Origin: Macrostomum lignano
Taxonomy: Eukaryota
NCBI GenBank assembly: GCA_002269645.1
Contig: NIVC01002606.1
Span: forward strand, 17,123 to 81,122
Length of the DNA: 64,000 nt
Reading direction: 5' to 3'
This document shows, in pieces, positions 19,777 through 44,745 of this stretch (the first letter of the stretch is position 1; the number at the start of each line of letters is the position of its first letter). A model generated the notes under the pieces. The model saw nothing but the letters and a program-made list of their open reading frames with translations, had not been told where the DNA came from and searched no databases. A program made the position numbers and the translations under genes.

Positions 19777-20189
19777 ATTTGAAAAACGCGTTTTCGAAAA
19801 TAATAGATAAATAATTAGTTTTTGAAATGCTAAAAGAACAATAGATTTCATCTATTAAGCAAATTTATTTATCATATTTTACGTTTTTTAGTTCTATATG
19901 ATATTGGTGCTTTAACTTTGTTTTACAATAAATACGTAATATAGTAGAAAACAGTTAACAGGATATGCTTTATGCAGTTCCAGGCGTTCATTTATGAATG
20001 AATATTCACATTTTAGAAAGCTTAGCTAAAAGCAAGAAAATTTAATGTGATGCAAATAAAATCTAGAAGAGAAAATTAGCACGTTAAAACAGAAATAAGT
20101 AACAATTCTTTAATTGCGTTCCGTGTCCAGAATTAATCGCTTCAAAATGAGTAGTAGACTTTGAGATAAAATTAATTGATCTCAGTATT

Positions 20190-20990
20190 ACTGAATAGGT
20201 TTTATCTGCTGCCGGCTGCATAGGAAACACCCTATAAAGCTGACTCGATCATCGATCTCGGATTGCGGCTGAGTCTCCACTCTCCGCTTCTATTGCATTA
20301 GCAACTCGTTTGGAGCTCTCTGTCTTCTGAAGTCAAATAAAGGCTTCCATCAATTTTAAATAGTTGAACACGATAACTTTGATATTATCTAGAATTCTTA
20401 AGTTGAGCCTAAACGATAGGTTCTGAGGGAGGGGGGGTGCCGCTCGGAGTTGAGGCTGTGGTCTATTTTTATTTAGAATCTGTTTGTTCGCATGGTTTCA
20501 TGTATAGCAACGGCAGGTTTTATAGGCAATGGAAATGGGGGACGTACATGTATTTCCCTAACTTTAGAACTATACTGTTTCTATGGGGTGGAGAGAAACC
20601 CTAGTTAAAGCTTGTTAGTTTGCATTGGAACAGTTGGGGGGGAGGTCAATCCATCGCTCTCTGTACGCATCAGCCCTTTTTGTGAAATTCTAGCATTCTG
20701 GCATCACTCTCTAAGCTACCTTTCTCCTGGTGGATTTATAAACACTAAAGACGTAACCCGTATTATTATCAGAAGGGCGGTGTCAGTGGGAGGAGCCAAG
20801 CCATGAGCTCAGGATTTATAGAGAAGTGAATATCAGGAATCATTTTTATTAAAGTGGATGTGAATGGTCGGTATTTAACGTACATGTAGGGATGATAGAT
20901 GTAGAACTCGGCATTGTTTTCCAGCCGTTGGCAGGCTGTGAAGAAGCAAACAATTTCCAGATCATCTATCCAAAAATAATGATTCAAAGA
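20190..20990 (-). pseudogene. Possible decayed Penelope-like retroelement (RT and GIY-YIG fragments)
   Basis: Stop-interrupted fragments in the expected order: FWIDDLEIV (RT YxDD-like), HRPSDNNTGY, and RILDNIKVIVFNYLKLMEAFI (GIY-YIG tail-like). Weak, by-eye similarity only. Confidence 0.25.
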
Positions 20991-21306
20991 GTTTCGCTTC
21001 GCCGCACCATTTCTTGAGCTTTAGAAACTTTAGGTTATCGGAAACTTTAGCTACACTCGTAATTCAATGCCAGCTCCTCAAGACTGGAGCCAGTCGCAGA
21101 CAAAGACATTTTTTATTTGACTCGTCTACTCTGTACCAAATCTAAGCAGTTGAATTAAATGGGTTAATGATTCCTGGAGTTTAACTTCAATTTGTGTGAT
21201 CTCAACTCTACTGTAAAAAATTGAGCAAAATATTATTACACTCAAATTAATAAAAGCTAAAGTTTTTACTTGAAATGCAGACAGAATGAAGGGGCACCAT
21301 AAAGAG

Positions 21307-23595
21307 TCAGTCCAGAGAGAGTCTGTAGGCCTGCAGCAGCACCCGCAGCTGGCTCATGCCTTCGTTCTCCCGTAGCAGCTGCAGTTCTAGCTCGTTAAGC
21401 TCGCCCGGCGGCCGCAGCGGCTGACAGCCAGTCAGGAAGTGATGCGGGGGCGTGAAGCTGGGCTGCACAACCCCATTGAGCTTCACGCCGGACACCATGT
21501 CCGGGCCGGAAAGCATGGGGTGGGCGGCGCCGTTTCCGGGGAAGTCGGCCACGGCAATGAACAGGCAGTCCAAGCAGCGGCCCGCCGGGCCCTCCTTCAG
21601 GTCCTCTGGGGTGCTGAAGGACAGGACGCGGCGCAGGCCGGCGCTGGGGCTGACAACGAAGGGCGGGGACACGGAGCAGGTCAGCAGGGCCCCGGGCAGG
21701 CAGTTTCTGACCACGGATTCGATCTCGTTCAGCAGCAGGCCCTGCAGCTCGTGGGCCCACAGTCGGGCTGTCTTCGTGGCCTCCTCGGGGAGGTCGGCAA
21801 TCCGGCCGGGCCAGAGCTCGGCGAACTCGGCCCCGCGCCACAGCAGGTAGCGCATAGTGGGGAACTGCCCCAGGCGCGCCGATCGCAGCAGCGCCGTGTC
21901 GCCCCGGTGGTCCCGCAGCTCCAGGCTGGCCCGGGCCTGCAGCAGAAGCTCGCAGGCGATCTGCAGGCCGAGGCCGGCAGCTGTCATGAGGGCCGTCCGG
22001 CCCGTGCGGCGCTCCGGCAGGTCGGGGTCGGCGCCGAACTGCAGCAGCAGCTGCAGGGCCTCCGTAAGGCCGCACTTGGCTGCGCAGTGCAGCAGCCAGC
22101 TGGTGCGGCTCTCCGGAATCTTGTTCAAGCTGGGACAGTCGGGATGCCGCAGCGCCTGGCTCAGCGCCGCCAGCGGCCGGTCCGGGTTCCGCACCAGCTC
22201 CAGCAGCTCCTTTTCGCCCAGCAGGCGTGGCGGGAATTCGGCGTCCCGCTCGGCCAGGAGGGTCCGCATTATGTCCGCCGGGCTGCCGTGCACCTGCCGC
22301 GCCGGTTTCACCAGCTCGGAGGCCAGCGTGGCCTTCAAGGCGTCGGACTCGGACCGGGCCGACTTGGCCGCGGCAGCAGCGGCATCGGGCTCCGATGCTT
22401 GGCCGGCACCGGCCGCAGACTTCGGCTGCGGGATTTCGCGTCCGGCGAAGCTCAGCAGCTTGGTCTGGCGCTTGCGGATCACCGCGCCTGAGGGCAGCGA
22501 CGCCCGGCCGTCGGTAGCTGCCTGAGCCGCCGCTCCGTGCAGCCGGCGAGGATCGCTAGGGCCTGTAGCTGCACTGCCGCCCGCCTCCTCGCTGATGTCA
22601 TTGCCATTGTCCAAGTCTTCGTCAGCCTGGTCGGCCAGCTGCTCGGCACCGCCGCCATCGCCATCTGCAGCGTCAATTTCATCGCCGTCTCTATCCCCGT
22701 CTGCTTCGCAGTCGCCGTCGCCTTCCGACGGTGTGTCGCCAGATTCGGCGATGCGCAGCTCCGAGAACGGCGTTTCGTCGTCTTCGTCATCGTCATCATC
22801 AGCGCCGTCGTCAGCATTGTAGGCCGGTGCAGCAATTATAAATGCCTTAGATTGCGGCTGCTGCACCTGCGGCTTTGGCTGTTGTATTTCTGACTCCCGC
22901 TGTTGCACTTCTAAAACCGGTGGTTGTGCTTGCGCCAGGGGCGGTTGCAGTTGCGACTCCGCCTGCTGCACTTGCGCCTTCGCAGTGGTCGACTCAGCCG
23001 CAGCCGACTGGGCCTTCCCGCTTCGCTCTTCCCGGTGCCGTTTGCGATGCTTCCCGCTTCGGCTCCGGCCGCTGCTCCTGCGCCGCACAGCCGACGAGCT
23101 GTCGTCGGAGATTTCGCCTTCTTCGAATTCTGCGCCGTCCTCTCGTGTGCCGGCGGCCGCAGCGGCCTCGTCTGTCTTCTTCTTTTTATGCTTCTTCTTT
23201 TTCGAAGAAGTTTTCGAAGAGGACTTTCGCGGCTTAACCTCTCCGTCTTCGTCGCTGCAGTCGCGGTCGGACAGGATGAACGCCTGTCTGCGGGGAGGCG
23301 GCGGCTGCTGCCTTGGAAGCCGCTTCGCCGCCTTGCTGGTCGTAGTGGAGCTAGCGGGCTCGGCCGTGGCCGCCTTGTTGGAGCTTCGCTGTAGGAAGGC
23401 GCGCACGGCCTCCTGCGCGTTGGCCAGGCTGGCCTCCTCCAGCCACTGGCAGCTGTCCGCGCCCCAGTCGCCCGCCCACTTCACCAGGTACTCGATAGCG
23501 CCCGTGCTCGAGTTTCTGCGCCGGTCGAGCACGCGCTCGATCTCAAACTCCTCGCCGCTGCTGTCGGACAGCGAGCCCTCCTCGTTCGAGTCCAC
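21307..23595 (-). CDS. MPHOSPH8: M-phase phosphoprotein 8 homologue (chromodomain, long charged linker, ankyrin repeats, MPP8-type C-terminal domain); copy a
   Basis: Chromodomain FEIERVLD..EYLVKWAGDW..WLEEASL; ankyrin repeats (LLHCAA..GADP, TALMTAA, TALLRSA..GAEF). The C-terminus LFI..DF.G..L.GP..V..V.LN..HF..N.L..LLQAYRLSLD matches the MPP8 C-terminus as I recall it. The ORF begins right after an acceptor (CTTCAG, 23596). AATAAA at 21117-21112. Confidence 0.88.
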   Translation of the reverse strand: MDSNEEGSLSDSSGEEFEIERVLDRRRNSSTGAIEYLVKWAGDWGADSCQWLEEASLANAQEAVRAFLQRSSNKAATAEPASSTTTSKAAKRLPRQQPPPPRRQAFILSDRDCSDEDGEVKPRKSSSKTSSKKKKHKKKKTDEAAAAAGTREDGAEFEEGEISDDSSSAVRRRSSGRSRSGKHRKRHREERSGKAQSAAAESTTAKAQVQQAESQLQPPLAQAQPPVLEVQQRESEIQQPKPQVQQPQSKAFIIAAPAYNADDGADDDDDEDDETPFSELRIAESGDTPSEGDGDCEADGDRDGDEIDAADGDGGGAEQLADQADEDLDNGNDISEEAGGSAATGPSDPRRLHGAAAQAATDGRASLPSGAVIRKRQTKLLSFAGREIPQPKSAAGAGQASEPDAAAAAAKSARSESDALKATLASELVKPARQVHGSPADIMRTLLAERDAEFPPRLLGEKELLELVRNPDRPLAALSQALRHPDCPSLNKIPESRTSWLLHCAAKCGLTEALQLLLQFGADPDLPERRTGRTALMTAAGLGLQIACELLLQARASLELRDHRGDTALLRSARLGQFPTMRYLLWRGAEFAELWPGRIADLPEEATKTARLWAHELQGLLLNEIESVVRNCLPGALLTCSVSPPFVVSPSAGLRRVLSFSTPEDLKEGPAGRCLDCLFIAVADFPGNGAAHPMLSGPDMVSGVKLNGVVQPSFTPPHHFLTGCQPLRPPGELNELELQLLRENEGMSQLRVLLQAYRLSLD

Positions 23596-23684
23596 CTGAA
23601 GGGTTCCGGTCGTTGAATTTGAGCAGCCGGATATTACAGCTCGCTTGGATATTCTAAGCGTAACCCGTACTTTGTGGAGCGCTG

Positions 23685-24420
23685 TCTGGGATCTGATGTG
23701 TACCAGCAGGGATCTGATGTGTGCCGGCTGGGATCTGATGTGTGCCAGCTGGGATCTGATTTGTGCCAGCTGGGATCTGATGTGTGCCAGCTGGGATCTG
23801 ATGTGTGCCAGCTGGGATTTAATGTGTGCCAGCTGGGATCTAATGTGTGCCAGCTGGGATCTAATGTGTGCCAGCTGGGATCTGATGTGTGCCAGCTGGG
23901 ATCTAATGCGTGCCAGCTGGGATCTAATGTGTGCCAGCTGGGATCTGATCTGTGCCAGCTGGGATCTGATTTGTGCCAGCTGGGATCTGATTTGTGCCAG
24001 CTGGGATCTGATTTGTGCCAGCTGGGATCTGATTTGTGCTAGCTGGGATCTGATTTGTGCTAGCTGGGATCTGATTTGTTTGTGCTAGCTGGGATCTAAT
24101 GTTTGCCAGCTGGGATCTAATGTGTGCTAGCTGGGATCTGATTTCTGCCAGCTGGCATCTGATGTGCGCTAGCTGGGATCTAATGTGCATTAGCTGGGAT
24201 CTGATGTGTGCTAACTGGGAATCCTGGGATCTGATGTGTGCTAACTGGGAATCCTGGGATTTAATGTGTGCTAGCTGGGATCTGATTTGTGCCAGCTAGC
24301 ATATGATGTGCGCTAGCTGGGATCTAATGTGCATTAGCTGGGATCTGATGTGTGCTAACTGGGAATCCTGGGATCTGATGTGTGCTAGCTGGGATCTGAT
24401 TTGTGCCAGCTGGGATCTGA
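23685..24420. repeat. 21-bp minisatellite
   Basis: Unit GCCAGCTGGGATCTGATGTGT; explains the CASWDLM-type ORFs. Confidence 0.96.
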
Positions 24421-25014
24421 GGATGTTAGGCATATGAAGATGCCAGTTGGGACAGGAACAAGAACTACGGTTCTAGCCTAATGGTCCAAGGTTTGCCTTC
24501 ACTGTTTAAATGAGTAACTACTGGAGCGCGAGTTGCACCTGCAGAGCCAGTGGGACAGGTCGCTACTAGCAGCAGAAGCATCTATCCAAGTTTATTGTTG
24601 CAAGCCTTTTACAAGTGCGATTGGATAGTAAGCAATGGCCCAAAACCATCAAGACAACATTTGGAACTAACAGTAATCAGAGTAACCAGTAACCAGGAAC
24701 GCTGCATACCAAATAAGGTAAGTACGCTCGCACAGAGGGCACACAAAAGTCAAACTGCTTCGAGTAAAACACAAACTAGAAACAGAAAAAGAAAACTGTA
24801 AGACTGGCTCGAGTTAAAACACGCGGGTGAATAAATTTGGGGCTCCAGGGGGTTCAAATAGCATTAAATGTGCAGGGCCCAGTTGATAATTTTTTCTAAA
24901 AAGCCGCAGGTAGAGGCCAATGTTTATTCAAAACGTTCGTGACTTGATGCGAGATCAATTCCAAAAATCTTCCAGAGTCCGGTGGCGGAGGCCCCCTTCC
25001 GGGCCGCGGGCAGC

Positions 25015-26589
25015 TCAGGCGGCACCGGCGTCGGGTCCGCGCGGCTGGGTGCAGGCGGCCGGCAGCAGCACCAGGCGGAGCCGGCAGCGGGCCGGACACT
25101 CCGGCCGCATGACCAGGTGCACCCGGTTGATCTGGCCGGGAGGCGCGCCGACTTCGTCAATTCTGTAGACGTAGAGGCAGTCCTTGCTGGGCTCGGGCTC
25201 GAGCTCGCGACCGTTCAGCTCCAGGCGGGCGAGCAGCTGGCAGCCGGCCACCCGGCGGAGCCGGACGCCGCCGCGGCCGTTGAGCTCCATGAGGCCGGCC
25301 AGCAGCAGGCGGGTGTCCGTTTCTGCCAGGCCTTCTGGGCTGACGAATTCAAAGGCGCACCTGGCGCCGGGCGCCACGCCGAACAGATGCGGCGGCTGGA
25401 CGCTGACAAAGCTGGACGGCCGGCCGGTGACGCGGCGCAGCGCGCTGAGCAGCGGCTCGGCCAGGCGGTCCGTCCAGCTGGCCAGCTGGGAGGCGGTCAC
25501 CCGCCTAAGCAGCTGGTCGAACTCGGCACCGTGGAACAGCAGCCCGGCCGCGACATCCCAGTGGTTGGAGCGGGCGGCCAGCAGCAGGGCGGAGGCGGTC
25601 TGGTCTCCGCCGGTGTCCGGCCGCGCGCCGAAATGCAGCAGATGGTGCACGGCGGTGGCATCGCCAGCCTGTGCGGCCAGCATCAGCGGGGTGATGCCGC
25701 TGGCTTCGGCTGCGTCGGCCTCGGCGCCAGCAGCCAGCAGGGCCAGCAGGAGGTCGGCGGAGCGCCGGTCCGCCCGAGCGGCTGAGTGCAGCAGGCGGCC
25801 GGAGCCGGCAAACTTGCTGTTCAGCGTGGCGGCGCTGGCCAAGCTGGCGGCGGCGAACAGGGTGGCCGGGTCGCCGGCGGCCAGAAGGCGCTGGAGGTTG
25901 CTCAAACTCGGTGCCGACGCCGATTTGGCGGCGAGTTTAGCCGAGGCGGCGGCAACGGCGTCGCTGCAGCAAAGCTGGCGAAGTGCGCCGGCACTGGAAC
26001 TGACGGGCGACGGGCGGCTGAGCGCCTGCGCCAAGCTGTCGGACCTCTGGAAATCCGGCAGGACCGGCTGCTGCTGGCCTTTGCGGGTGGCAACCAGGCC
26101 GCTGGGCCCGGGGGCGCGGCTCCTGCCAGGGTCGGTGCGCTGCAGTAGGCTGGCGCCAGTTATTTCTTTTGTGCTGCTGTGCAGCTTCTCCTTGCGCTTC
26201 CTGGCGGTGCACATTTTCTCTATGCGGGCCCGCCGGCTGCCGGGCGGGTGGCGCGGCTGCTGCTCGTACTCGGGCGTTTTGTCAGCTGAGCTGGCCGAGG
26301 TGTGGCGCCGCTTGGCCAGCTGGTCTTCCGTCAGGCTTTGGTGCGAGCGCTTGCGGGCGAGGGCCGAGGCGGCCTCATCAGCTCCGAGCACCCGGCTGTG
26401 CCGGTTGGTCCGCTTGAACTGCTCCAGCAGCTGGCGGTTCTGCGGGCAGTGGGTGATGATGTCGGCTTCGGTGGCCCAGACGTAGCTGGCGGAGGCGGCG
26501 CAGCTCTTGAATTTAGCCTGGTATTCAGTCTGGCCGCGGTGTCCGGCGCGAGAGCCAATGATTTTTTCCAGAATTCGTGATGACAGCAT
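25015..26589 (-). CDS. MPHOSPH8-like: Divergent MPP8 paralogue (degenerate chromodomain, ankyrin repeats, diverged C-terminal domain); copy b
   Basis: Likely ATG at 26589, 5 nt after a strong acceptor (TTTTGCCTTCCAG, 26595). Chromo-like ILEKIIG..EYQAKFKSC..VWATEADI; three clear ankyrin repeats ending LL.HGAEF as in copy a; C-terminal domain with LELNG and GQINRVHL. AATAAA at 24928-24923. Confidence 0.8.
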   Translation of the reverse strand: MLSSRILEKIIGSRAGHRGQTEYQAKFKSCAASASYVWATEADIITHCPQNRQLLEQFKRTNRHSRVLGADEAASALARKRSHQSLTEDQLAKRRHTSASSADKTPEYEQQPRHPPGSRRARIEKMCTARKRKEKLHSSTKEITGASLLQRTDPGRSRAPGPSGLVATRKGQQQPVLPDFQRSDSLAQALSRPSPVSSSAGALRQLCCSDAVAAASAKLAAKSASAPSLSNLQRLLAAGDPATLFAAASLASAATLNSKFAGSGRLLHSAARADRRSADLLLALLAAGAEADAAEASGITPLMLAAQAGDATAVHHLLHFGARPDTGGDQTASALLLAARSNHWDVAAGLLFHGAEFDQLLRRVTASQLASWTDRLAEPLLSALRRVTGRPSSFVSVQPPHLFGVAPGARCAFEFVSPEGLAETDTRLLLAGLMELNGRGGVRLRRVAGCQLLARLELNGRELEPEPSKDCLYVYRIDEVGAPPGQINRVHLVMRPECPARCRLRLVLLPAACTQPRGPDAGAA

Positions 26590-27543
26590 ATTCGCTGGAA
26601 GGCAAAAGTTAAAATGGCGAACTTGATTGAGGCTTCGCTGCTTCACAGGTTGCGTGTCCGGTCTTAGATATGAAATTCGTCCGATTCAGAGTGGAAGGCA
26701 GAGCGGCGGGCAGGATGGATGGGGATAAAGCGTGACCTCGGGAAGATGGATGGGGGATAAAGCGTGACCTCGGGAAGATGGATGGGCAAAGCCGGGGAAC
26801 AGGAGTGGGAAGCAGAGTTTGCTGCACTTTGGCTGCTTTATCGATTTTCTCGCCAAGTCTCTGCCCCACTAGCCTGTGGACACAGAGGGCTCGAGTGGGA
26901 GGGGGGAAGAGAGGCTGGCCTTACGTGCAATGAGGAGCGGGGCCAGCCCTACTAAACCAGGATGACTGAAAGCTTCAGTTCCTCTGTAAGCAAGAAAAGC
27001 TGCTAAAGCAGAGCCGGTCCTTTTTCTCCAGTTGAATCTTCAAGTTGACGGCAAAGTTAAAAAAGGCAGCGCAATTTCTTCAGACACAATCAAAGTAAAC
27101 CGCCCTCGCTTATTCGCGTTTCCTCTGTTAGAAAAAAGCAGGCTAGCTGAAGGCACACAGGGAGGCCAGGCACAGGCTGTAGAGCGGCAGGGAGTTGGGG
27201 CTCGGGGGTTTTGAACGGCAGCGGGCCGGGCGGGGAGCCAGCGCGAGCCTTTAAATACCCGCGGCGGTGGGGTGGGCGTCATGGGGCTGGGGTGACTGGG
27301 GTGGTGGGGCTGCACGGTGCAGGGAGGGAGGCGGGGCTCGCCAAACCGCAAACGAGAGGAGAGGGCCAGTGCGGAATGGACTTTGACCCTGCAACCATCG
27401 CAAGGCTCAGTGAATCCCAGCTAGATTATCACTTCACAGCTGGCCATGCTAAGAATGCGATGAATGGAGCAAGCCCGGCAAACTACCTACACCCAAGGTG
27501 GCAAAGCTAAAAATGATGGCAGATAACAAAACTCAGTAAAGCC

Positions 27544-27920
27544 CATAGATAAAGTATACCATAGATTCCACCCCTACCCCCGCGGAGTGTCTAAATTGTG
27601 ACCATCACTTTATTCACTGCGCTCCTATTGGCTGGGCCACGCTATGCACATTGAGTCCACGTGTGTACATTCCCCCAACTCCGCTTTTCTATTATCTCCG
27701 CTTTAACTGTTGAAACTGGTAAGACATCCTTTCGTTCCGCGCATTAAAGTTATAAAGCTTTCTTGTGTGGAAGGGGTGAGGGAATGAAATCGAAGGTGTT
27801 GAAAGGAAGGCTTTCGCGCCAGCCAATGAGAGCACGGTGAGTTTTATGGTGGTCAAAGTTTGGACACGAGCGTGTGTACATTCTGGGCAGGGGTGGAATC
27901 TATGGTATACTTTATCTATG
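27544..27920. mobile_element. MITE with 32-bp TIRs and 8-bp TSD (hAT or P superfamily)
   Basis: TIR CATAGATAAAGTATACCATAGATTCCACCCCT. TSD GTAAAGCC at 27536-27543 and 27921-27928. Confidence 0.85.
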
Positions 27921-28206
27921 GTAAAGCCTCTCCGTTTCTCAATGAAATCGGCTGTGCGGACACAATGCAAATCCATTATTTTATTACACAGGTAGGCTGT
28001 CAATGCAGTGGGGAATTTGAGAAGCGATGACATTCGTCGGGTCAGTTGAGTATAGTCTCAGCAACTGTGACCTGGCAACCCAACGAATGCTGTGATAAAA
28101 AAGAAAAAATACTGCAAACAGCTCTAAGCAATTGTATTCGCCTTAGTCTAGTGTCGCTCAATTTTTTAATTAAGATTTTTAATATTTGTTGTCTAACTCG
28201 ATCTCG

Positions 28207-28605
28207 TACACGTGCCTAACCCTAATCTTGTACCTGTCTGACCCTAATCTTGTACACCTGCCTAACCCTAATCTTGTACACCTGCCCAATCCTAATCTTG
28301 TACACCTGCCTAACCCTAATCTTGTACACCTGTCTAACCCTACTATAGTACACCTGCCTAACCCTAATCTTGTACACCTGCCTAACCCTAATCTTGTACA
28401 CCTGCCCAATCCTAATCTTGTACACCTGCCCAATCCTAATCTTGTACACCTGCCTAACCCTAATCTTGTACACCTGCCTAACCCTAATCTTGTACACCTG
28501 CTTAACCCTAATATTGTACACCTGTCTAACCCTACTATAGTACACCTGCCTAACCCTAATCTTGTACACCTGCCTAACCCTAATCTTGTACACCTGCCTA
28601 ACCGT
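28207..28605. repeat. 24-bp minisatellite
   Basis: Unit CCTAACCCTAATCTTGTACACCTG. Confidence 0.96.
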
Positions 28606-29126
28606 AATATCGCATAGCTGACTAAATCAATATTTACCTATAAAATAGGTACAAACAAAGATTAAATAGGTTACATCGAATTACAGGCATACGCTGCTTT
28701 AACCAGCGAGAATCCCGCAGAGGTGCAAATGAATGCAAAACCAGCAGCATTTGCTGCACCTGGCCTGCATCGAGTTCGAGTAGCCGGAACCGCAGACACA
28801 GCTAATACTACATTGAAAGTACATAAAAGAAGCCGAATTCAATACCACTGCAAGTATTAAATAGCGACACCTACTGCTGCTTGACGCAGTAGAGAAAATG
28901 ACATGAAAAACGGCCTACTGGTTGCTGGGCTCAGGCTCGGGTTTTGACAGACAGATACACACAGATAAGGTGAAAGTGAGATGAGAGACAGGTGCGCAGA
29001 GGCAGACCAGTTTAACCAGTGGAGCCGCGGGCAGGGGCGGCAAGCTCAGACAGCTAGTAGCAGGCCACATAAAGTCTAAAGTTACTATGCACTCCTATCG
29101 TGTCAGAGGTCAGGTGAGGTCAAAGT

Positions 29127-32100
29127 TCAATCCAGTCCAGCGGACCTCGGCATGGCGGCCAGGCGGGCGGCCAGACAGGCAAAGCTGGGCCGCTGGTCGG
29201 GACAGTAGCGCCAGCAGTGCAGCAGCAGCTCGTACACCGGACCCGGACAGGCGGCCGGACAGGGCAGGCGGTCGCCCCGCTCCAGCATCTGCACGATCTC
29301 CGTGCCCTTGAGGTCGTGGTAGGGCCTGGCGCCGTAGCTGAACAGTTCCCAGCAGGTGACGCCGAAGCTCCAGACGTCCGACTGGCAGCTGAAGCGGAAG
29401 TAGTAGATGCACTCAGGGCTGTACCACTTCAGCGGCCAGCGGCCGGCCGCATCGGCACGGTAATAGTCACTGCCGCCGGCCAGCGCGCGGCTCAGGCCGA
29501 AGTCCGAAATCTTGACGCTGCACCGGCCGGCCAGCAGGACGTTGCGGGCGGCCAAGTCGCGGTGGACGAGGCGGCGGGACTCCAGGTAGCGCATGCCCTG
29601 AGAGACCTGGTGGGCCAGCTCTGTGAGCTGCTCGACTGGGCACTCGCTGCGGGTTCGCGGTCGGGGATTCCGGTCAGTAGTGAAGATGGAGTGAAGGGAC
29701 TGTAGTGAAGATGGAGTGAAGGGACTGTAGTGAAGATAGAGTGAAGGGACTGTAGTGAAGATGGAGTGAAGGGACTGTAGTGAAGATAGAGTGAAGGGAC
29801 TGTAGTGAAGATGGAATGGAGGGACTGTAGTGAAGATGGAATGGAGGGACTCTAGTGAAGATGGAGTGAAGGGACTCTAGTGAAGATGGAGTGAAGGGAC
29901 TCTAGTGAAGATGGAGTGAAGGGACTCTAGTGAAGATGGAATGGAGGGACTCTAGTGAAGATGGAGTGAAGGGACTCTAGTGAAGATGGAGTGAAGGGAC
30001 TCTAGTGAAGATGGAGTGAAGGGACTCTAGTGAAGATGGAAAGGAGACTCTAGTGAAGATGGAAAGGAGACTCTAGTGAAGATGGAATGGAGACTCTAGT
30101 GAAGATGGAATGGAGACTCTAGTGAAGATGGAATGGAGACTCTAGTGAAGATGGAAAGGAGACTCTAGTGAAGATGGAATGGAGACTCTAGTGAAGATGG
30201 AAAGGAGACTCTAGTGAAGATGGAATGGAGACTCTAGTGAAGATGGAATGGAGACTCTAGTGAAGATGGAAAGGAGACTCTAGTGAAGATGGAATGGAGA
30301 CTCTAGTGAAGATGGAATGGAGACTCTAGTGAAGATGGAAAGGAGACTCTAGTAAAGATGTCTATAAATTTACCGTAATAAAGATATCTGGCAAAAATGG
30401 CAACTCTGAAAAAATATTAAGGGTACGCGATGAAACTTGCCAATTCATCTACTCACAGTAGGCTAGTAGTGGGTGCAAGCATTTTATATTAATTTCAGAA
30501 AAAATACATTGGCTTTGAACTGCCAGTGACTGCTAGTGAGAGGACCCTACTTCGCTTCAAAATTTTCAATGAGGCATGAATTATTCCGTTCGATAACAAA
30601 CGCTGACATTTTATTTCTTTCTAAACTTCCGAGCTGCAGCTGCCAGACAAACGGAAGAATTAAACTGGCACTCACGGGTGCTTCCTGAGGAACTTGTTCA
30701 CGGGCCCGAGCGGCGCCAGCTCCAGCACCAGCATCAGGCAGCCGCTGCCGTTCGCCCGGCTCAGGCCCAGCAGACGGAGCACCCGGGGATGCCGCAGGCC
30801 GCTCATCACCCGCGCCTCGGCCAGCACGTCAGCTTCAGCTGCGGCGCCGGCGCCAGAACGGAGGGTCTTCACCGCCACTCGAACCTCGCGGCCGGTGCAC
30901 GGGTCGCGGTGCAGGGCGGCTCGGACTTCGCCGAAGTTGCCGCCGCCGAGGCGCTCGCCGAGCCGCAGACGGTCAGCCGGCAGCTCCGGAGCGGCTCCGA
31001 GGCCGTCAGCGGGCGGCAGATCGGGCGGCTCCTCACTGTCGCTTCCGCTGCCGTACCACCAGTCGGCGATGTCCGCGCAGTCGCTGGTGCAGCCACCACT
31101 GCCGCCTCGGTCAGTTTTCTCCGGCCTGTCGCAGCTGCCGCCTTCATCAGCGGTGTCGTCATCAATGCGCACCAGGAGGTCCACGGCGACTGACGCAGCG
31201 GCGGCGGCAGGCACGAAACGGTTGGGGCTGTCGGTCAGCGTCGAATTGATGTCCAGAAGGCGCCGACATCGGCAGCAGGTGCCCGAGGAGGAGCCAGACG
31301 ATGAGGTCGGGTCAGTGATGTCGGAAGAATCTGAGGACAGCTGCCGGCTCTGCGCAGGGGAGACATCGATAAGAGCAATGCAAAGTACGCGGCGTCTTTA
31401 AAATATCTGCCTGACTAATTGAAATCCAGGCCAGAGCCCTTTCCCGCTACATGTTGTCAGAAAATTCGACTCGATTCGAGTCGAGGACTTCGAGTTTAGT
31501 CCAGGAAACGACCTGCATGCTTTCAAAGAGCATACTTGTTATAATGTTAGAAATTACGGGTTTCAAAATCCCTTTGTGAGAGTCTGAGGAGATCGCTTGT
31601 AAACCTGGCTGGTCCTCCCGGGGCAAAAACCTCAGCTTTAGCATTTCCGCCCGTCTGCCAACAGCCGGAGACCCGCCGCAGTGCACACGCACTGGTAGCC
31701 AGTAAACAGGACAGGCAGAAGGCGGGCGAGCCGGCCCAGTCAATTAAAAACAAGCACTGGAACTTTCCCACAGAATCCGGCCCTGAGAAGCAGCAATATC
31801 TGAACGAAAAGTTGCGCGCACTGCCCCGAGCCGTTCTGCATTCCGCTGCACCCCGGGAGATTTAGCGAGATGAGAGGCCAGACAGCGCAGTTCGATCCAG
31901 CGCCAGGAGGGTGGCTGGGGGGGGGGGCAGCGAGAGCCGAACCGGGAAATACAAAACAGAGATCAGAGAAACGCGGGCTAAACTAAGCCAATTTCGATTC
32001 CCGCAATTCAGCACGCGCAAACAAGCCAGCCAGCTCGCCTCTCCCGACAGCCCCGAGTTCGCTCTCCGTGTCACAACAGCCACACATTTACTAAGCAAAG

Positions 32101-35100
32101 CCGCAGTCCCGCTAAGAACCCTCATCTCAGCTGCCCCTACCTCTTGCACCTGACTAATTAGTCGCAGACTCTAATAAGGCCTAATTGACCCACTTTCCCA
32201 TGCCCGCTACCTGCGCAGGGGTCAAAGCAGCGGGTGGGAGCGGAGGAATTCGGCCACTGGAATTGAAAAAAGCTGGCGGCGCTCAGAAGCAGCGGAGGCT
32301 GCGGGGCCGGCCATCAAAAAGTCGCGAGCCTCAATCCAGATAGGGATGAGGCAGGCCTTTCGGCAAATCCGCCGCTACTGATCAAGAGACCTAATCCGAT
32401 TGGGCTGGGGTGGGCGGCCACTAGAGGCCAATTTGCCAGAACTGACAACTTATTGCCCAGTGAAAAACTGCAGACGGGTCACCGAAGTCGCCTGCCTCAG
32501 CCGGACGGACAGCCCGCCATTCTACAGCAGCAGCAGCTACCCGCTGGGAAATGGGATCGAGCCCCGGACACGTAATCAAGACAGGATTAGACTGTCGGAT
32601 GCGGCCTCCACTCGCGGTGATTGGCTATAAATTTTGATTCACTCTTCCCAATCCCATCCAGATCGGAGAGTCTCCCTCTCTCTACTCAATCAGTGTAGCA
32701 AATTTGCCGACTCTTTGGAGACACTGTTCCACTTACACAGAGGCAGGCTGCAACTTAATCACCTCTGCAGCTTCCAGCGAGCTCCATCAGGTTCAGGCAG
32801 GGGAAGGAAGGCCAAAGGAATGAGGGGGGGTCACAATTGAGGCACCAAAAGAAAATGGAAGGCGGAGAGCTGAGGCTGCGGGTAATTGAGAGGCTACCAG
32901 CGGGCCGCCAGCCGCTGACAGCCGGAGGGGCAAGTCTCTTAGAGCTGCCAGAGCTGCTGAAGGCAAATGCGCCCGCAGAAGAAAGCAGGCGGGCATTGTG
33001 TGCGTCCGTCGAGCACCACCAGTCATGACAAGCAAAGACAGGCTAACAGAGAAGAATTCACATGCGATCGCCTTGGCCACATGAAAGAGAGTCCGCCAGG
33101 AAGCGCAAAGGGCAGGAAGCAGACCCTTGTGCCGCTGCCATTAATCAGGCCTGGGCGCCGATCCGCCACTCAGATACGGGGGGGGGGGTCGCACAGACCG
33201 GACTGTGGATTCTGCGATATCGAAAGTACTCAAAACTCATCAATGCCTCATTGTGCGCGCCAAAGCAAAAGTGCAAGGCCTGCTTCTACTGACTCTTGAA
33301 GAAGACCATAAAGTTTAAGAGCCAGTCGGAATCGGATTGGATAATGCAAACTGGATGCGGCAAATCAGATCTGCGAGTCACCTGGCCAGCAGCGGGCTAA
33401 TTTAGCAGCCAGCGGCCCAGCATGCTCTCAGTAATCCCGCAGTCCTGCCTATAGCAGCTCTTGAACACCCACGCCGGACAGGAAGGACAGTCGGCATTAT
33501 TGAGTTAGGCTGTCGGGGTGGCCGGCCGATTTTCCAACTGGCCAGCAGCTCAAGTGAGTAGCCGGGCCAGGCTAAAAAGACTCTGGCGAGATCCCCGCAG
33601 CGGATCAATCAGGCGGGATGGGATCGGGACGGGAGGGGCTACTCGGCAACAAGATTTGCGAGCCCCGAAAGATGGAGAATCCGAGCCTAATGCGCCAAGT
33701 CCCCGCGGGCCGAGCAGAAGGCTGTGGCATCATAGGTACTCGCAGGAGGCGGAATGGCGCCTCGGCCAGCCCAGTTAGGGGAGAGCTGAAGACGGAGCCG
33801 ATGCGGCATCATTGCATTCCGGGCAGCGCTGGCGGGCCGCTAATAGTCGCCATTAGCTAGGTGGCTGGGATGAAGGAAGACAGCTGAGACTGGGAGACAC
33901 CCTGACTGCTGAGTGCAGGGCCAGGGAGACACCCTGACTGCTGAGTGCAGGGCCAGGGAGACACCCTGACTGTTGAGTGCAGGGCCAGGGAGACACCCTG
34001 ACTGCTGAGTGCAGGGCCAGGGAGACACCCTGACTGCTGATTGCAGGGCCAGGGAGACACCCACCCTGACTGCTGATTGCAGGGCCAGGGAGACACCCTG
34101 ACTGCTGAGTGCAGAGCAAATTAAACACAAGCAAAAAGCAAGCCGCTCGAAGCGAAACCGCACGGAAAAAATCTGACACTCTAAAAAGGAGCCAGAACTG
34201 GAGTGGCTGCAATCAGGCCTGACAATAACCTGCAGAACTTGCAGCCTCCAGTTTGATGCAAGCGCCTTGATGCACAGGAATTTTGGCGCGATTCAATCCG
34301 AACTGGAATGGCGGACGGTTTACACCAAAGCGGCGGCCAGAGGCAGTAAACACAGCATTTAAAAGCACCCCAGGGCCTGACATTGCCCATCAACTGTCGT
34401 TAAACATTCGCTTTACTCGCGCAAGAAGACCGCACCGGTTCCAATTGTAATTCTTTTCTTCGCTTTGCTGACGGCCATCTGGGCCGGTCAGGCGCAGCGG
34501 CGGCAATGCCCGGATGCCTGAGCCAGCTGGGAGGGAATTTCAGGACAAAAGGCCATTGTGAGCGGCAGCCAGTCCTTCACGCCGCTGCCCCCCACCCCCC
34601 AATGCGATGAGGCAGGCAGAGAGGGGAGGCAGGCCAGGCCGGACCTGTCAGGCGCCGCTGAGAAGCTGAGAAATCAATTATCGGAATTCAATGCCACCCC
34701 GACTCCGGGCCGGCCGGCAACTTCATCGCCCAGCCTCTCCGACCAACAAGAGCACTTTCTCCCATCCGCCTGCGCGCCCCTTGAGGAGGGAAGAAAACAG
34801 AGCGGGGAGGAGAATACCCCAGTTGAGCACGGAAGGCCGCCCAGAAACGGATCAAGCAGCCTGGCAAATCGGAAGTGCACCGGCCGATTTCTTCATTTGA
34901 GAGGAAGCAGCTTGTGTTTGAAGAAATCGCAGTTCGGACTGAGCCGAGATGCAACAGAGCTTGGCGGGGCTGGCGTGACTGCCGGGGTTTCCGCTGATTT
35001 CCCTGCGAGCCGAAGGATTTGAGCAGGCGAAGGACTTTTACGCACACAAAGGATGGAGCAGGCTAATCCTGCGGAAGACTTTGGGTGTCCCCAAACAGCG

Positions 35101-36921
35101 TGAGGCGCAAGGCTGCAGGGTCACGCGGGGCGCCACTCGCGCCAAGCAAAATGACGGAGGAATTCAGCTTCGGCCTTCAAAATGGAAGCTGATTAACGGC
35201 GGGGCTTTGACCGCAGGCCAGTCGGCTGGCTGGCTGGCTGGATCTCGCGAAAGGCAGGCAGGAAACCGGGGAGCAAGAAGGCTCAGGCGTTCACTTACAA
35301 TGGCCGCAACAAAGTGCCTGACAGTGCAAAATGGGACAGCATTGAGATCATTGAGATCTACTCAGCTGGCAGCTCACACATCCGCCCACACCATTGAGCC
35401 CAACATCCGACTGGCTTCAGTCAGCTCAAGCGGATTCACGGAATGGAAGCCGCACACGGCTGCGGGAGTCGGAAGAGAATTTTGATTGGGGAGGCCCGGT
35501 AGCAACTACTGCAGGCAAAGGGTAAATTTCTCGGGTAAGACCAAATATTGACCCGAAACTGAGGGAGCCATTCAGTCCTAAATGGGGTTGGCTGAAGACC
35601 AAATTTGCACCAATACTGAGGACCAAATGCAGCCCAATACTGAGGACAAAATGCAGCCCAATACTGAGGACCAAATTTGCACTAATACTGAGGACCAAAT
35701 TCGCCCCATATACTGAGGACCAAATGCACCTCAATACTGAGGACCAAATGCACCCCATTACTGAGGACCAAAAGCACCCCAATACTGAGGACCAAATGCA
35801 CCTCAATACTGAGGACCAAATGCACCCCATTACTGAGGACCAAATGCACCCCAATACTGAGGACCAAATGCACCCCATTACTGAGGACCAAATGCACCCC
35901 ACTACTGAGGACCAGATCCACCCCAGTGAAGCAAGCAGCTCACAGCTGGCTCAGATTCCGCCGTTTCCGTCCAGCTGAAGCGGGTGCGGCCGGTCCCAGC
36001 CCCGCTGCTGACGGTAGCGCAGGCGGCACTCGGAGCGACGTCAGGGTGGTCGGGCCGGGGAACCGGCCGGCGCAGGCGGCACAGCAGACCGTCCTGCCGC
36101 AGGTGGTAGTGATCGACCAGCTGGGCTAGCGAGGCGAAGGCGTGGCCGCCTTCGATGCGAAGCCGCTGACCGTTGGGCAGGCGGTCGATCCTGTAGTGCT
36201 TCGGCTCGCGGCGGCAGCTGAGGCTCAGCGCGAAGGCACCGCCCCCGCATGCGCTGCGCACCAGGAAGGCGCCTTCGACGTGGCCGGCGGCAGCCAGACG
36301 GCGCTCGGCCTCCTCGCGGCAGAGCCGGCCGTGAAACCAGGGCTGGCGCAGGTGCAGCTGTGACAGCGCCAGACGGCAGGCGAGGGCGCGCTGCGGCTCG
36401 TCCAAGTTGAGGCTGTCGTAGCCGAGTTCCGTCGCCTTGGCAACCGTGGCAGCGGCGAGGTCGTCCAGGGTGACGCCCTGCAGCGCCAGCGGGCTCGAGT
36501 CTGCTGGCCGGTCGCACGGCAGGCTGGCGAGGGTGACGAAGCCGTCCAGCCGGGCGGCATGATGTCGAAGGAGCTCCACGGGGCCGGGGAAGGCGCGGCC
36601 GTTGGCGATGCGGTAGGCGCCGTCGGGCTGCCGCTCGACACTGTAGTGCAGCACCCGTCCAGCGTGGCAGATGCTCACCGCGTAGTTGCCGCCCGTGGAA
36701 GCGCGCAGCAGGAAGAGGCCGTCGGCGGCGCCGCGCGCTAACAGCTGCTCCTCAGCCTGTTCCCGGGTGAGCCGGCCGTGGAAATAGGCCTGGCCGGCTG
36801 GGCTGACAGCTGACCGGAAGTCTTGGGTCGCCTGCTGATGCCGGCCAGCCGTGGCGCCGCCGCAGCCGCAGGCGGTGCAGCTGGAGCAGCAATGCACATA
36901 GGGATTAGCTGGGAATTTCAT
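29127..36921 (-). CDS. SYK: SYK/ZAP70-family tyrosine kinase (tandem SH2 plus kinase), 3 exons, about 723 aa
   Basis: Exons 36921-35944, 31349-30676 and 29646-29127, phases 0 and 2 consistent. Two SH2 domains (YFHG..FLLRAS; WFHG..FLVRSA) with no ankyrins between them. Kinase motifs: LGGGNFG, VAVKTL, HRDLAARN, DFGLSRAL, DYYRA, GRWPLKWYSPECIYYFRFS. Confidence 0.93.
29685..30360. repeat. 25/23-bp minisatellite in SYK intron 2
   Basis: TAGTGAAGATGGAGTGAAGGGACTG grading into TAGTGAAGATGGA(A/T)..GAGACTC. Confidence 0.96.
33883..34112. repeat. 32-bp minisatellite in SYK intron 1
   Basis: Unit CAGGGCCAGGGAGACACCCTGACTGCTGAGTG. Confidence 0.95.
35595..35925. repeat. 24-bp minisatellite in SYK intron 1
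   Basis: Unit ACTGAGGACCAAATGCACCCCAAT. Confidence 0.95.
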
Positions 36922-40744: not shown

Positions 40745-40759
40745 TCTTCTATCTTCTAA

Positions 40760-41674: not shown

Positions 41675-41714
41675 ATTAAAAGCTTTTATTAAAGGACAAA
41701 TAAAGGACAAAAGG

Positions 41715-44700: not shown

Positions 44701-44745
44701 TAAAAGAAGCGTCATGTAAAAATCAAAAGAAGCGTCATGTCAGAC
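41715..44745. repeat. 23-bp satellite (~130 copies) inside a Helitron
   Basis: Unit GTAAA(A/C)AATCATAGAAGCGTCAT. Confidence 0.98.

What the first reader, a model, noticed from the sequence alone, without database searches (positions are those of the whole stretch)
25015..26589. Tandem MPP8 paralogue with a dismantled methyl-lysine cage
Seen: aligned to copy a, the three cage positions read R/I, F and C (SRILEKIIG..EYQAKFKSC) instead of F, W and W. The chromo scaffold (EY.A.F, VWATE), ankyrins and C-terminal domain remain in an uninterrupted ~525-codon frame. Inference: a retained reader-dead MPP8 that could form an alternative HUSH-like complex, act as a dominant-negative, or bind another ligand such as RNA. 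I know of no described MPP8 pair of this kind; vertebrate HUSH2 diversifies through TASOR2.
Basis: partly seen in the sequence, partly recalled or inferred. Interest (0 to 1): 0.8.

Follow-up and report, generated by a model that had tools for sequence, protein, structure and literature searches.

The report
Flatworm MPP8-like gene, degenerate chromodomain
In the flatworm Macrostomum lignano, a gene resembling the human chromatin-silencing factor MPP8 sits beside a much-diverged duplicate that stays intact in three genomic copies but lacks most of the residues that normally grip methylated histone, so it probably works without reading that mark.

Summary
Window 25015-26589 (minus strand) is an uninterrupted 524-codon ORF, copy b. 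It lies 1.4 kb upstream of a 762-codon paralogue, copy a (21307-23595). The DNA is Macrostomum lignano contig NIVC01002606.1.

- **Copy a is an MPP8 homologue.** It has a Pfam chromodomain, ankyrin repeats and a C-terminal beta-sandwich. The sandwich aligns with the human MPP8 PINIT-like domain (BLASTP E=3e-6, z=9.5) up to both C-termini.
- **Copy b is homologous to a.** The match is E=8e-8 overall and 1e-5 for the beta-sandwich alone. The AF2 model of its ANK+C-terminus, although low-confidence (pLDDT 57.6; TM 0.25-0.33), finds human MPP8 CTD (8QFB) as the best PDB match.
- **Copy b keeps the chromodomain fold but not the cage.** Its N-terminus is predicted as a chromodomain (best matches CDYL and HP1). 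The cage positions read R5/F27/C30.
- **Copy b is not a pseudogene.** All three genomic copies are intact. Against the divergent homeologue it has 0 indels (23 expected from flanks) and 1.2% divergence versus 4.7% in flanks. Its dN/dS of 0.50 is, on its own, not distinguishable from 1.
- **New here:** b is strongly basic (pI 10.0) and a is acidic (pI 5.1).

Loss of methyl-lysine reading, any TASOR-like partner and expression remain untested. This is a modestly interesting lineage-specific variant of a known family.

The parts
25015..26589 (-). Copy b: complete 524-codon ORF (ATG 26589 to stop 25015-25017), the MPP8-like paralogue with the degenerate chromodomain
   Evidence: ORF, GC3 0.84 versus GC2 0.55; called gene in GCA_002269645.1; intact in homeologue, 0 indels
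26404..26589 (-). b residues 1-62: chromodomain-like fold (three strands plus helix), net charge +4
   Evidence: Pfam Chromo E=0.013; z=6.3 and 8.4 versus HP1a and CDYL; AF2; Foldseek chromodomain hits; charge
26575..26577 (-). b codon R5, at cage position 1 (HP1 Y24, MPP8 F59, a F17)
   Evidence: alignments; coordinates
26509..26511 (-). b codon F27, at cage position 2 (HP1 W45, MPP8 W80, a W40); still aromatic
26500..26502 (-). b codon C30, at cage position 3 (HP1 Y48, MPP8 Y83, a D43 with W44 next); the following residue in b is A31
25915..26403 (-). b residues 63-225: basic, probably disordered linker (net +16, pI 10.9; RKRKEK and KRRH patches)
   Evidence: AF2 pLDDT below 50 for its C-terminal part
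25516..25914 (-). b residues 226-358: ankyrin repeats
   Evidence: Pfam Ank_2 6.8e-10; AF2 helices, pLDDT 68-90; hhalign to human MPP8 ANK
25018..25515 (-). b residues 359-524: long helix followed by an eight-strand beta-sandwich (MPP8 PINIT-like position); lacks the terminal AYR motif
   Evidence: AF2 H186-208 then 8 strands; Foldseek top hit 8QFB; BLASTP to a E=1e-5; hhalign
26595..26600 (-). TTCCAG, which matches the M. lignano spliced-leader acceptor motif [T/C]TNCAG, 5 nt before b's ATG
   Evidence: sequence; motif from PMC8629364; conserved in homeologue
24923..24928 (-). AATAAA poly(A) signal 86 nt after b's stop codon
   Evidence: conserved in homeologue
21307..23595 (-). Copy a: 762-codon ORF, the conventional MPP8-like gene (chromodomain 23380-23595, acidic linker, ANK 21820-22275, PINIT-like 21310-21819); no genomic in-frame ATG
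   Evidence: Pfam Chromo 1.6e-9, Ank_2 1.3e-12; PDB chromodomain hits; human MPP8 PINIT-like match E=3e-6, z=9.5; omega 0.21
23596..23601 (-). CTTCAG acceptor motif immediately before a's first codon; the spliced leader's terminal ATG would be in frame (M-V-D-S-N-E-E...)
   Evidence: sequence; SL sequence and motif from PMC8629364; identical in all three loci
23686..24364 (.). 21-nt minisatellite (about 32 copies) filling most of the b-a intergenic spacer

Best explanation
Copy a is the M. lignano MPP8 homologue. It has an N-terminal chromodomain, a long acidic linker, ankyrin repeats, a long helix and a PINIT-like beta-sandwich.

Copy b is a much-diverged tandem duplicate of it that selection has kept intact. 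Its chromodomain still folds, but two of the three aromatic cage residues are replaced (R5 and C30, with only F27 aromatic). The strand that normally clamps the histone tail starts only four residues after the initiator Met. Copy b therefore most likely cannot read H3K9me3 in the canonical way.

I propose that b works through its ANK-helix-beta-sandwich module as a scaffold subunit. This module corresponds to the part of MPP8 that binds TASOR SPOC-DomI and suffices for silencing in mammals. Its now strongly basic chromo-like domain and linker would supply a different contact, either to nucleic acid or to an acidic partner. That would give a methyl-mark-independent version of an MPP8-type silencing subunit.

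- **Shown:** paralogy, family membership, retained fold (predicted), cage substitutions, charge reversal and selective retention.
- **Inferred:** loss of methyl-lysine binding, scaffold role, any TASOR-like partner and any nucleic-acid contact.
For: **Paralogy.** BLASTP of a against b gives E=8e-8 over ANK plus C-terminus and E=1e-5 on the beta-sandwich alone. In 1.84 billion representative proteins the a+b beta-sandwich profile finds only a, b and one spurious repeat protein.

**MPP8 family.**
- The a beta-sandwich against the human PINIT-like domain gives E=3e-6, 29% identity over 105 aa, ending LLQAYRLSL against LLIGAYRVQL, with z=9.5.
- hhalign of ANK+CTD against human MPP8 563-860 gives 97.7%, E=1.4e-12, 240 colinear columns. 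The human sequence was verified against 8qfb_B.
- The b model's four best PDB hits are 8QFB chains (E=4.9e-7 to 2.5e-6, 251-278 columns). The best pure ankyrin protein is about 200 times weaker.
- The model shows the long helix followed by a beta-sandwich, as described for MPP8.

**Chromo fold with lost cage.**

**Retention.**
- The ORF is intact on NIVC01002606.1, NIVC01002977.1 and NIVC01000195.1.
- Against the homeologue there are 0 indels where 23.3 are expected (P=7e-11), and 19 substitutions where 73.5 are expected from flanks.
- R5/F27/C30, the acceptor motif, the ATG and AATAAA are identical in all copies.
- GC3 is 0.84, like a at 0.80.
- The called genes at this locus include the multi-exon kinase gene, so they look taken from the GenBank annotation of this assembly. 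That annotation is wholly transcript-derived (PMC5730564).

**Plausibility of a reader-independent role.** MPP8 F59A/W80A/Y83A and MPP8 112-858 still rescue mouse ES cells and repress LINE1, while the C-terminus is essential (PMC8144423). TASOR-like DUF3715-SPOC-DomI proteins exist in invertebrates (PMC10578480).

**Charge reversal.**
Against: - dN/dS for b against its homeologue is 0.50 on only 19 substitutions and does not differ significantly from 1 (P=0.10). It is higher than for a (0.21), though that difference is also not significant (Fisher P=0.26).
- The beta-sandwich of b shows 3 nonsynonymous changes to 1 synonymous.
- dS in b (0.019) is below the flank divergence (0.047). Gene conversion or locally low mutation could therefore contribute to the low divergence.
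- b's beta-sandwich has no direct detectable similarity to human MPP8 (E=2.5, z=1.1). It lacks the terminal AYR motif, so partner binding may be lost or changed.
- The AF2 models are low to moderate confidence (pLDDT 57.6 and 65.5, built on two-sequence alignments that include a). The TM-scores to 8QFB are only 0.25-0.33.
- F27 is still aromatic, and atypical cages exist, so residual methyl-lysine binding is not excluded.
- The homeologous b' is not annotated as a gene in NIVC01000195.1.
- If the mRNA is SL trans-spliced at TTCCAG, the leader's AUG lies out of frame 8 nt before b's AUG.
- No orthologue in any other species was found, so long-term conservation is unknown.
- Whether M. lignano has a TASOR-like gene was not testable.
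Confidence: 0.55

Rival explanations
1. Neofunctionalised paralogue outside any HUSH-like complex. Copy b has kept the ankyrin and beta-sandwich scaffold but has changed partners. It would use its basic chromo-like domain and linker to bind RNA or DNA, or an acidic protein, in an unrelated process.
For: - Charge reversal of every non-ankyrin region: b has pI 10.0 and a has pI 5.1.
- b's beta-sandwich is unrecognisable against human MPP8, whereas a's is recognisable.
- The C-terminal AYR motif is lost.
- Identity to a is only about 23-26%.
Against: - The domain order and predicted fold are still those of the MPP8 CTD.
- There is no positive evidence for nucleic-acid binding.
- Tandem linkage with a, and the same acceptor-type 5' end, are compatible with a related role.
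Confidence: 0.22
2. Competitive or dominant-negative subunit. Copy b still binds the TASOR-like partner but cannot dock on H3K9me3 or on H3K9-methyltransferase peptides. It would therefore titrate the complex away from heterochromatin and tune silencing.
For: - The ANK plus beta-sandwich fold is retained.
- The cage is lost.
- In mammals the MPP8 chromodomain is needed for stable chromatin binding and SETDB1 association (PMC8144423; bioRxiv 10.1101/2023.12.21.572340).
Against: - The same paper shows that cage-mutant MPP8 still supports LINE1 repression, so a reader-dead subunit need not be inhibitory.
- b's partner-binding surface is strongly diverged.
- There are no expression or stoichiometry data.
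Confidence: 0.1
3. Decaying duplicate. Copy b would be a young or slowly dying pseudogene whose open frame is a leftover.
For: - Omega is 0.50 and not significantly below 1.
- The beta-sandwich shows 3 nonsynonymous changes to 1 synonymous.
- The homeologous copy is unannotated.
- Pfam Chromo is below threshold.
- No orthologues were found.
Against: - a and b are only about 26% identical, so the duplication is old or b evolved fast. Yet b keeps 524 open codons, while the two other same-strand frames have 9-10 stops.
- All three genomic copies are intact, including one that has diverged 4.7% in flanks with 46 indels per 3.1 kb. The CDS has 0 indels (P=7e-11) and a quarter of the flank substitution rate.
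- Splice-acceptor, ATG and poly(A) signals are conserved.
- GC3 is gene-like.
Confidence: 0.06
4. Not MPP8 at all. The chromo-ankyrin architecture of a and b would be a flatworm-specific, convergent domain fusion.
For: - The profile search of 1.84 billion proteins with the C-terminal domain found no MPP8, and PDB sequence searches found nothing.
- a's chromodomain is closer to CDYL (1e-9) than to MPP8 (5e-4).
- MPP8 is said to have no orthologue in Drosophila or Caenorhabditis (PMC9635835).
Against: - Direct pairwise and profile comparisons with the verified human MPP8 CTD are significant and colinear to the very C-terminus.
- Foldseek ranks 8QFB first among 350,542 chains.
- The database-wide searches simply lacked power at this divergence.
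Confidence: 0.05

Closest known systems
Vertebrate MPP8 (MPHOSPH8), the H3K9me3-reading subunit of the HUSH complex; CTD structure PDB 8QFB
   Same: - The domain order matches: N-terminal chromodomain, long low-complexity linker, ankyrin repeats, a long helix and a PINIT-like beta-sandwich at the extreme C-terminus.
- Copy a matches the human PINIT-like domain by sequence (E=3e-6).
- The a+b profile aligns over 240 columns with human residues 563-860.
- The b model's best PDB hit is 8QFB.
   Different: - b has R/F/C at the cage (human F59/W80/Y83), no acidic N-terminal extension and a basic rather than mixed or acidic linker.
- b's PINIT-like domain is not directly alignable to human and lacks the terminal AYR motif.
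- hhalign places one fewer ankyrin repeat in a and b than the five in human MPP8.
- Both genes appear intronless here.
- Binding to TASOR, SETDB1 or ATF7IP is unknown.
Engineered MPP8 F59A/W80A/Y83A and MPP8 112-858 (Mueller et al. 2021, PMC8144423)
   Same: These are reader-dead or chromodomain-less MPP8 with an intact C-terminus, which is what b looks like. They still rescue self-renewal and LINE1 repression.
   Different: They are laboratory mutants of a single-copy gene. b is a natural, long-diverged paralogue that coexists with a cage-bearing copy, and its C-terminus has also diverged.
HUSH2 (TASOR2-centred paralogous complex, PMC11532391)
   Same: It is a precedent for diversifying HUSH-type silencing by duplicating one subunit.
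   Different: In vertebrates the duplicated subunit is TASOR, and MPP8 is shared. Here the duplicated subunit is the MPP8-like protein. No complex has been demonstrated in flatworms.
CDYL/CDYL2/CDY chromodomains
   Same: They are the closest chromodomain sequences and structures to both a (E=1e-9) and b (Foldseek rank 1, TM 0.69).
   Different: CDY-family proteins carry a crotonase-like C-terminal domain rather than ankyrin repeats plus a PINIT-like domain, and they have intact cages.
Cage-less chromo-type folds (HP1 chromoshadow domains)
   Same: They have a chromo-like fold without a methyl-lysine cage and are used for protein-protein contacts. CBX3 and HP1alpha chromoshadow domains appear among b's Foldseek hits (ranks 39 and 46).
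   Different: b's domain aligns better with canonical chromodomains, sits at the N-terminus and has no evidence of dimerisation.

Membership tests
MPP8 (MPHOSPH8) family | N-terminal chromodomain fold | tested here: met
   - Copy a: Pfam Chromo 1.6e-9 and PDB chromodomain hits.
- Copy b: sub-threshold in Pfam (E=0.013), but z=6.3 and 8.4 against HP1a and CDYL. The AF2 three-strand plus helix model finds almost only chromodomains in the PDB. The model was built with a in the alignment, so it is not fully independent.
MPP8 (MPHOSPH8) family | Three-residue aromatic cage for methyl-lysine (human F59, W80, Y83) | tested here: not met
   - Copy b has R5, F27 and C30, so only one residue is aromatic. 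These are identical in all three genomic copies.
- Copy a has F17 and W40, then D43 at the strict third position with W44 adjacent. It is probably met with a one-residue bulge, but this was not modelled.
MPP8 (MPHOSPH8) family | C-terminal module: ankyrin repeats, extended last helix, PINIT-like beta-sandwich ending the protein | tested here: met
   - Copy a against human PINIT-like: BLASTP E=3e-6, z=9.5.
- Profile of a+b against human: 80% and 1.4e-5 for the sandwich; 97.7% and 1.4e-12 for ANK+CTD.
- b model: long helix 186-208 followed by 8 strands, with top Foldseek hits being 8QFB.
- Caveats: b alone against human is not significant, model pLDDT is 57.6, and TM is 0.25-0.33.
MPP8 (MPHOSPH8) family | Long disordered linker between chromodomain and CTD | tested here: met
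   - Copy a has about 370 residues of low-complexity acidic and K-rich sequence.
- Copy b has about 160 basic residues, with AF2 pLDDT below 50 where it was modelled.
MPP8 (MPHOSPH8) family | Orthology (reciprocal best match or phylogenetic placement with MPP8 of other animals) | tested here: inconclusive
   Word-indexed and exhaustive searches returned only the flatworm proteins themselves and generic ankyrin proteins. No invertebrate MPP8 sequences could be retrieved to build a tree.
HUSH-type complex subunit | Binds the SPOC-DomI region of TASOR or a TASOR-like protein through the CTD | not testable with these tools
The literature shows only that DUF3715-SPOC-DomI proteins exist in invertebrates.
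HUSH-type complex subunit | Binds H3K9me3 and H3K9me3-like peptides of SETDB1, ATF7IP, G9a and GLP | not testable with these tools
   This needs peptide binding assays or complex modelling. The sequence predicts loss in b (inference).
Expressed protein-coding gene (as opposed to pseudogene) | Intact ORF under constraint, with processing signals and transcript support | tested here: met
   - Three intact copies.
- 0 indels against 23 expected, and 1.2% against 4.7% divergence.
- Acceptor motif, ATG and AATAAA conserved.
- A gene is called on two contigs of an assembly whose GenBank annotation is transcript-derived.
- Not met on dN/dS alone (0.50, P=0.10).
- RNA reads were not inspected directly.

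The most novel reading that the evidence does not exclude
Macrostomum has split the MPP8 role into two dedicated subunits. One is an acidic, cage-bearing reader (a). The other is a basic, cage-less paralogue (b) whose chromo-like domain and linker bind nascent RNA or DNA. On this reading a flatworm HUSH-like machine could be targeted either by the histone mark or directly by nucleic acid. This would be a natural separation of the 'read' and 'scaffold/target' functions that are fused in vertebrate MPP8.
Probability: 0.12. Interest if true: 0.65.

Novelty: new variant of a known kind. Interest (0 to 1): 0.4.

Why it matters
HUSH is usually described as a vertebrate system, and MPP8 is reported to have no orthologue in flies or nematodes (PMC9635835). 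A flatworm MPP8 homologue, recognisable down to the last strand of the PINIT-like domain, adds to the evidence from TASOR-like proteins in invertebrates that the core of this silencing machinery is older than vertebrates.

The cage-less, charge-reversed paralogue is a natural counterpart of the laboratory cage mutants that still silence LINE1. It offers a way to ask what an MPP8-type subunit does when it cannot read H3K9me3. M. lignano has RNAi and transgenesis, so the question is testable there.

The finding remains a lineage-restricted paralogue known from one species, and its function is entirely inferred. The interest is therefore moderate, not high.

Tried and rejected
- **Orthologue searches.** Full-length b, full-length a and a's chromodomain (which returned one candidate and nothing scored) gave only the query proteins and generic, mostly bacterial ankyrin proteins. 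No cross-species dN/dS was possible.
- **Exhaustive profile search.** The a+b beta-sandwich profile against 1.84 billion representatives found only a, b and a bacterial Ig-like repeat protein, which I judged spurious.
- **PDB sequence searches.** The beta-sandwich, both as a single sequence and as a profile, found nothing. The ANK+CTD profile was swamped by DARPins and ankyrins.
- **dN/dS between NIVC01002606.1 and NIVC01002977.1.** The two are identical across both coding sequences, so this was uninformative.
- **Global MAFFT of full-length a and b.** It misplaced b's chromodomain into a's linker, so it was not used for modelling.
- **An upstream exon restoring the first cage residue.** Rejected, because R5 lies inside the exon, downstream of the acceptor-like site and of the ATG.
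- **A role for the in-frame GTG-initiated extension (MKQRSLNQ..., ORF start 26646).** Considered unlikely, since it lies across the acceptor motif.
- **Literature on flatworm MPP8 or MPHOSPH8.** No papers were found. Searches on HUSH evolution gave no data on invertebrate MPP8.
- **Supplements of PMC10578480.** These were not held, so the presence of a TASOR-like gene in flatworms could not be read off.
Full report
**What and where.** The window is Macrostomum lignano genomic DNA. The protein of the flagged ORF is called on contigs NIVC01002606.1 and NIVC01002977.1 of assembly GCA_002269645.1, and the window is 100% identical to the former.

On the minus strand two long, intron-free ORFs lie in tandem, downstream of an SH2-tyrosine-kinase gene. 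Copy b is the finding. Its maximal ORF is 25015-26646 and its first ATG is at 26589, giving 524 codons. Copy a spans 21307-23595 (762 codons). A 21-nt minisatellite fills most of the 1.4-kb spacer between them.

**Checking the observation.** The quoted residues are present and the frame is open. The other five frames of the same interval carry 4-21 stops. Pfam finds ankyrin repeats in both proteins. It finds a chromodomain at the N-terminus of a (1.6e-9), but only a sub-threshold one in b (E=0.013, 15.8 bits against a 25.1-bit cut-off).

The weak chromo signal in b is nevertheless real:
- AF2 predicts three strands (6-15, 21-28, 36-40) and a C-terminal helix, with pLDDT 64-82.
- All but one of the 50 best Foldseek matches in the PDB are chromodomains or chromoshadow domains, led by CDYL, CDYL2, CDY1, Chp1 and HP1. 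TM-scores normalised to the target are 0.6-0.8 and rmsd is 1.8-2.6 A.

The alignment RILEKIIGSR / TEYQAKFKSC against HP1 YAVEKIIDRR / VEYYLKWKGY puts R5, F27 and C30 at the three cage positions.

In copy a the strictly equivalent third position is D43, with W44 next to it. Both paralogues share a one-residue longer loop between the second cage residue and the conserved Trp of strand 3. The reading 'F, W, W' for a therefore requires a bulge (sequence).

**Are these MPP8 genes?** Database-wide sequence searches could not answer this. Three word-indexed searches and one exhaustive profile search of 1.84 billion representatives returned only the two flatworm proteins, generic ankyrin proteins and one spurious bacterial repeat protein. 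PDB sequence searches with the post-ankyrin domain were empty.

The published crystal structure of the human MPP8 C-terminal domain defines the family's characteristic module. It has five ankyrin repeats, a last helix twice the normal length and a PINIT-like beta-sandwich that, with the repeats, binds TASOR SPOC-DomI (bioRxiv 10.1101/2023.12.21.572340).

An AF2 model of b residues 200-543 (ORF numbering) was built with a as the only other sequence, and has mean pLDDT 57.6. It shows ankyrin helices, a 23-residue helix and then eight strands. Against 350,542 PDB chains its four best Foldseek hits are chains of 8QFB, the human MPP8 CTD. E-values are 4.9e-7 to 2.5e-6 over 251-278 columns. The best pure ankyrin protein follows at 9.5e-5. 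The TM-scores are low (0.25-0.33), so this alone would be suggestive only.

I therefore obtained the human CTD sequence. My recalled version matched 8qfb_B at 100% over 298 residues, and I compared against it directly:
- Copy a's beta-sandwich aligns with the human PINIT-like domain at E=3e-6, 29% identity over 105 residues. The alignment runs to the last residues of both proteins (LLQAYRLSL against LLIGAYRVQL). The z-score is 9.5 against 5000 shuffles.
- The a+b beta-sandwich profile gives hhalign probability 80%, E=1.4e-5.
- The ANK+CTD profile gives 97.7%, E=1.4e-12, colinear over 240 columns.
- Copy b alone does not match human MPP8 (E=2.5, z=1.1), but it matches a (E=1e-5 for the sandwich alone).

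So a is an MPP8 homologue by direct sequence evidence. Copy b belongs to the family through a, through the profile and through its predicted fold. Copy b has lost the terminal AYR motif that a shares with human MPP8.

**Is b retained or decaying?** The second contig is essentially identical, with 0 differences in either coding sequence, so it is uninformative.

A cluster look-up revealed a third copy of a (PAA88366.1, 'hypothetical protein BOX15_Mlig016440g1, partial') on NIVC01000195.1. That locus is a diverged homeologue. It contains an unannotated but fully intact b' (L003 7367-8941).

| Comparison with the homeologue | Substitutions | Indels |
|---|---|---|
| Non-repetitive flanks (3107 nt) | 4.67% | 46 events |
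| CDS b | 1.21% (19 subs; 73.5 expected) | 0 (23.3 expected, P=7e-11) |
| CDS a | 1.70% (39 subs) | 0 |

Nei-Gojobori dN/dS gives the following:

| Copy | Synonymous | Nonsynonymous | Omega | P against neutrality |
|---|---|---|---|---|
| a | 24 | 15 | 0.21 | 2e-6 |
| b | 8 | 11 | 0.50 | 0.10 |

The difference between a and b is not significant (Fisher P=0.26).

In the chromo-like core of b (residues 1-58) there are three synonymous and no nonsynonymous changes. R5, F27 and C30 are identical in all copies. The TTCCAG acceptor-type motif 5 nt before the ATG, the ATG itself and the AATAAA 86 nt after the stop are also conserved. GC3 is 0.84, as in a at 0.80.

The called genes at this locus include a multi-exon kinase gene, so they appear to come from the GenBank annotation of this assembly. 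That annotation was built only from RNA-derived transcripts (PMC5730564). A called gene for b on two contigs therefore implies transcription, although I could not inspect reads.

Taken together, b is a maintained gene, probably under somewhat weaker constraint than a.

**5' ends.** The M. lignano spliced leader ends in ATG and its acceptor motif is [T/C]TNCAG (PMC8629364).

Copy a has no in-frame genomic ATG. It begins directly after CTTCAG, and the leader's ATG would be in frame (M-V-D-S-N-E-E). This explains why the GenBank protein is flagged partial. This step is an inference.

In b the leader's ATG would be out of frame, 8 nt before b's own ATG, opening an 88-codon overlapping frame. If b is trans-spliced there, its translation would depend on leaky scanning.

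The two proteins have opposite charge:

| Region | Copy a | Copy b |
|---|---|---|
| Overall pI | 5.1 | 10.0 |
| Chromodomain net charge | -8 | +4 |
| Linker net charge | -14 | +16 (pI 10.9) |
| Beta-sandwich region net charge | -6 | +6 |

**Most likely mechanism.** Two of three cage aromatics are gone, and the N-terminal strand that clamps the histone tail begins only four residues after Met1. Canonical methyl-lysine reading is therefore unlikely (inference from chromodomain structural knowledge).

In mouse ES cells a triple cage mutant and a chromodomain deletion of MPP8 still rescue self-renewal and LINE1 repression, whereas the C-terminus that binds TASOR is indispensable (PMC8144423). TASOR-like proteins carrying exactly the SPOC-DomI region that MPP8 binds exist in invertebrates (PMC10578480).

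The best-supported reading is that b acts through its ANK-helix-beta-sandwich module as a mark-independent subunit or adaptor. Its basic N-terminal half would provide a different contact, possibly to nucleic acid. The rivals are:
- complete neofunctionalisation outside a HUSH-like complex, which is favoured by the divergence of b's partner-binding domain;
- a competitive inhibitor;
- a decaying duplicate, which is disfavoured by the indel and divergence data;
- convergence rather than MPP8 homology, which is disfavoured by the direct alignments.

**Novelty and score.** I found no paper describing a flatworm MPP8, or an MPP8 paralogue pair with one cage-less member. The known diversification of HUSH is through TASOR2 (PMC11532391).

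This is a new variant of a known family, not a new kind of system. Degenerate reader-domain paralogues are a familiar evolutionary pattern. The evidence comes from one species, and no function has been tested. The interest score of 0.4 reflects three things: a clean, verifiable natural 'reader-dead' MPP8-type gene in a tractable animal; the extension of MPP8 to flatworms; and the unexplained charge reversal.

Noticed in passing
L003 (NIVC01000195.1) 7367-8941; homeologue of window 25015-26589: A third, diverged genomic copy of b is fully intact (524 codons, 19 substitutions, no indels). No gene is called there, although the neighbouring a' (PAA88366.1) and the kinase gene are annotated.
   Followed up: yes
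window 23596-23601 and 23595 (minus strand): Copy a has no in-frame genomic ATG. Its ORF starts right after a CTTCAG spliced-leader acceptor motif. The M. lignano leader ends in ATG, which would be in frame, so the start codon is probably donated by trans-splicing. The GenBank protein is flagged 'partial'.
   Followed up: partly
window 26590-26600 (minus strand): If b is trans-spliced at TTCCAG, the leader's ATG lies out of frame 8 nt upstream of b's ATG and opens an 88-codon overlapping frame. Translation of b would then need leaky scanning.
   Followed up: partly
window 21307-23595 versus 25015-26589: There is a charge reversal between the paralogues. Copy a has pI 5.1 (acidic chromodomain and linker) and copy b has pI 10.0 (basic chromo-like domain, linker at +16 and beta-sandwich).
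   Followed up: partly
window 23464-23469 (minus strand), a residues D43-W44: Even the 'intact' copy a has Asp at the canonical third cage position and Trp one residue later. Both paralogues share this one-residue longer loop, so the insertion predates the duplication.
   Followed up: partly
window 54136-58332 (+): Helitron-type ORFs (Helitron_like_N 3.5e-46; PIF1 helicase, Pif1 2B and UvrD_C_2 domains) are split over several separate reading frames. This is probably a degraded Helitron transposon.
   Followed up: no
window 29127-36921 (minus strand): An SH2-domain tyrosine kinase gene with introns lies upstream of b (SH2 9.2e-36; HRDLAARN kinase motif). The same gene order, kinase-b-a, is found on all three contigs.
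   Followed up: partly
window 2103-12238, 28201-30360, 33892-35925, 41714-48798, 59520-60142: The density of 17-33-nt minisatellite arrays is very high, for example a 20-nt unit x115 at 4399-6696 and a 23-nt unit x133 and x87 at 41714-44768 and 46834-48798. They produce strong GC and AT skews and spurious long ORFs in several frames.
   Followed up: no
window 38001-50000 versus 20001-38000: GC content shifts sharply between blocks: about 0.31-0.37 against 0.49-0.64. The two MPP8-like genes sit in the GC-rich block.
   Followed up: no
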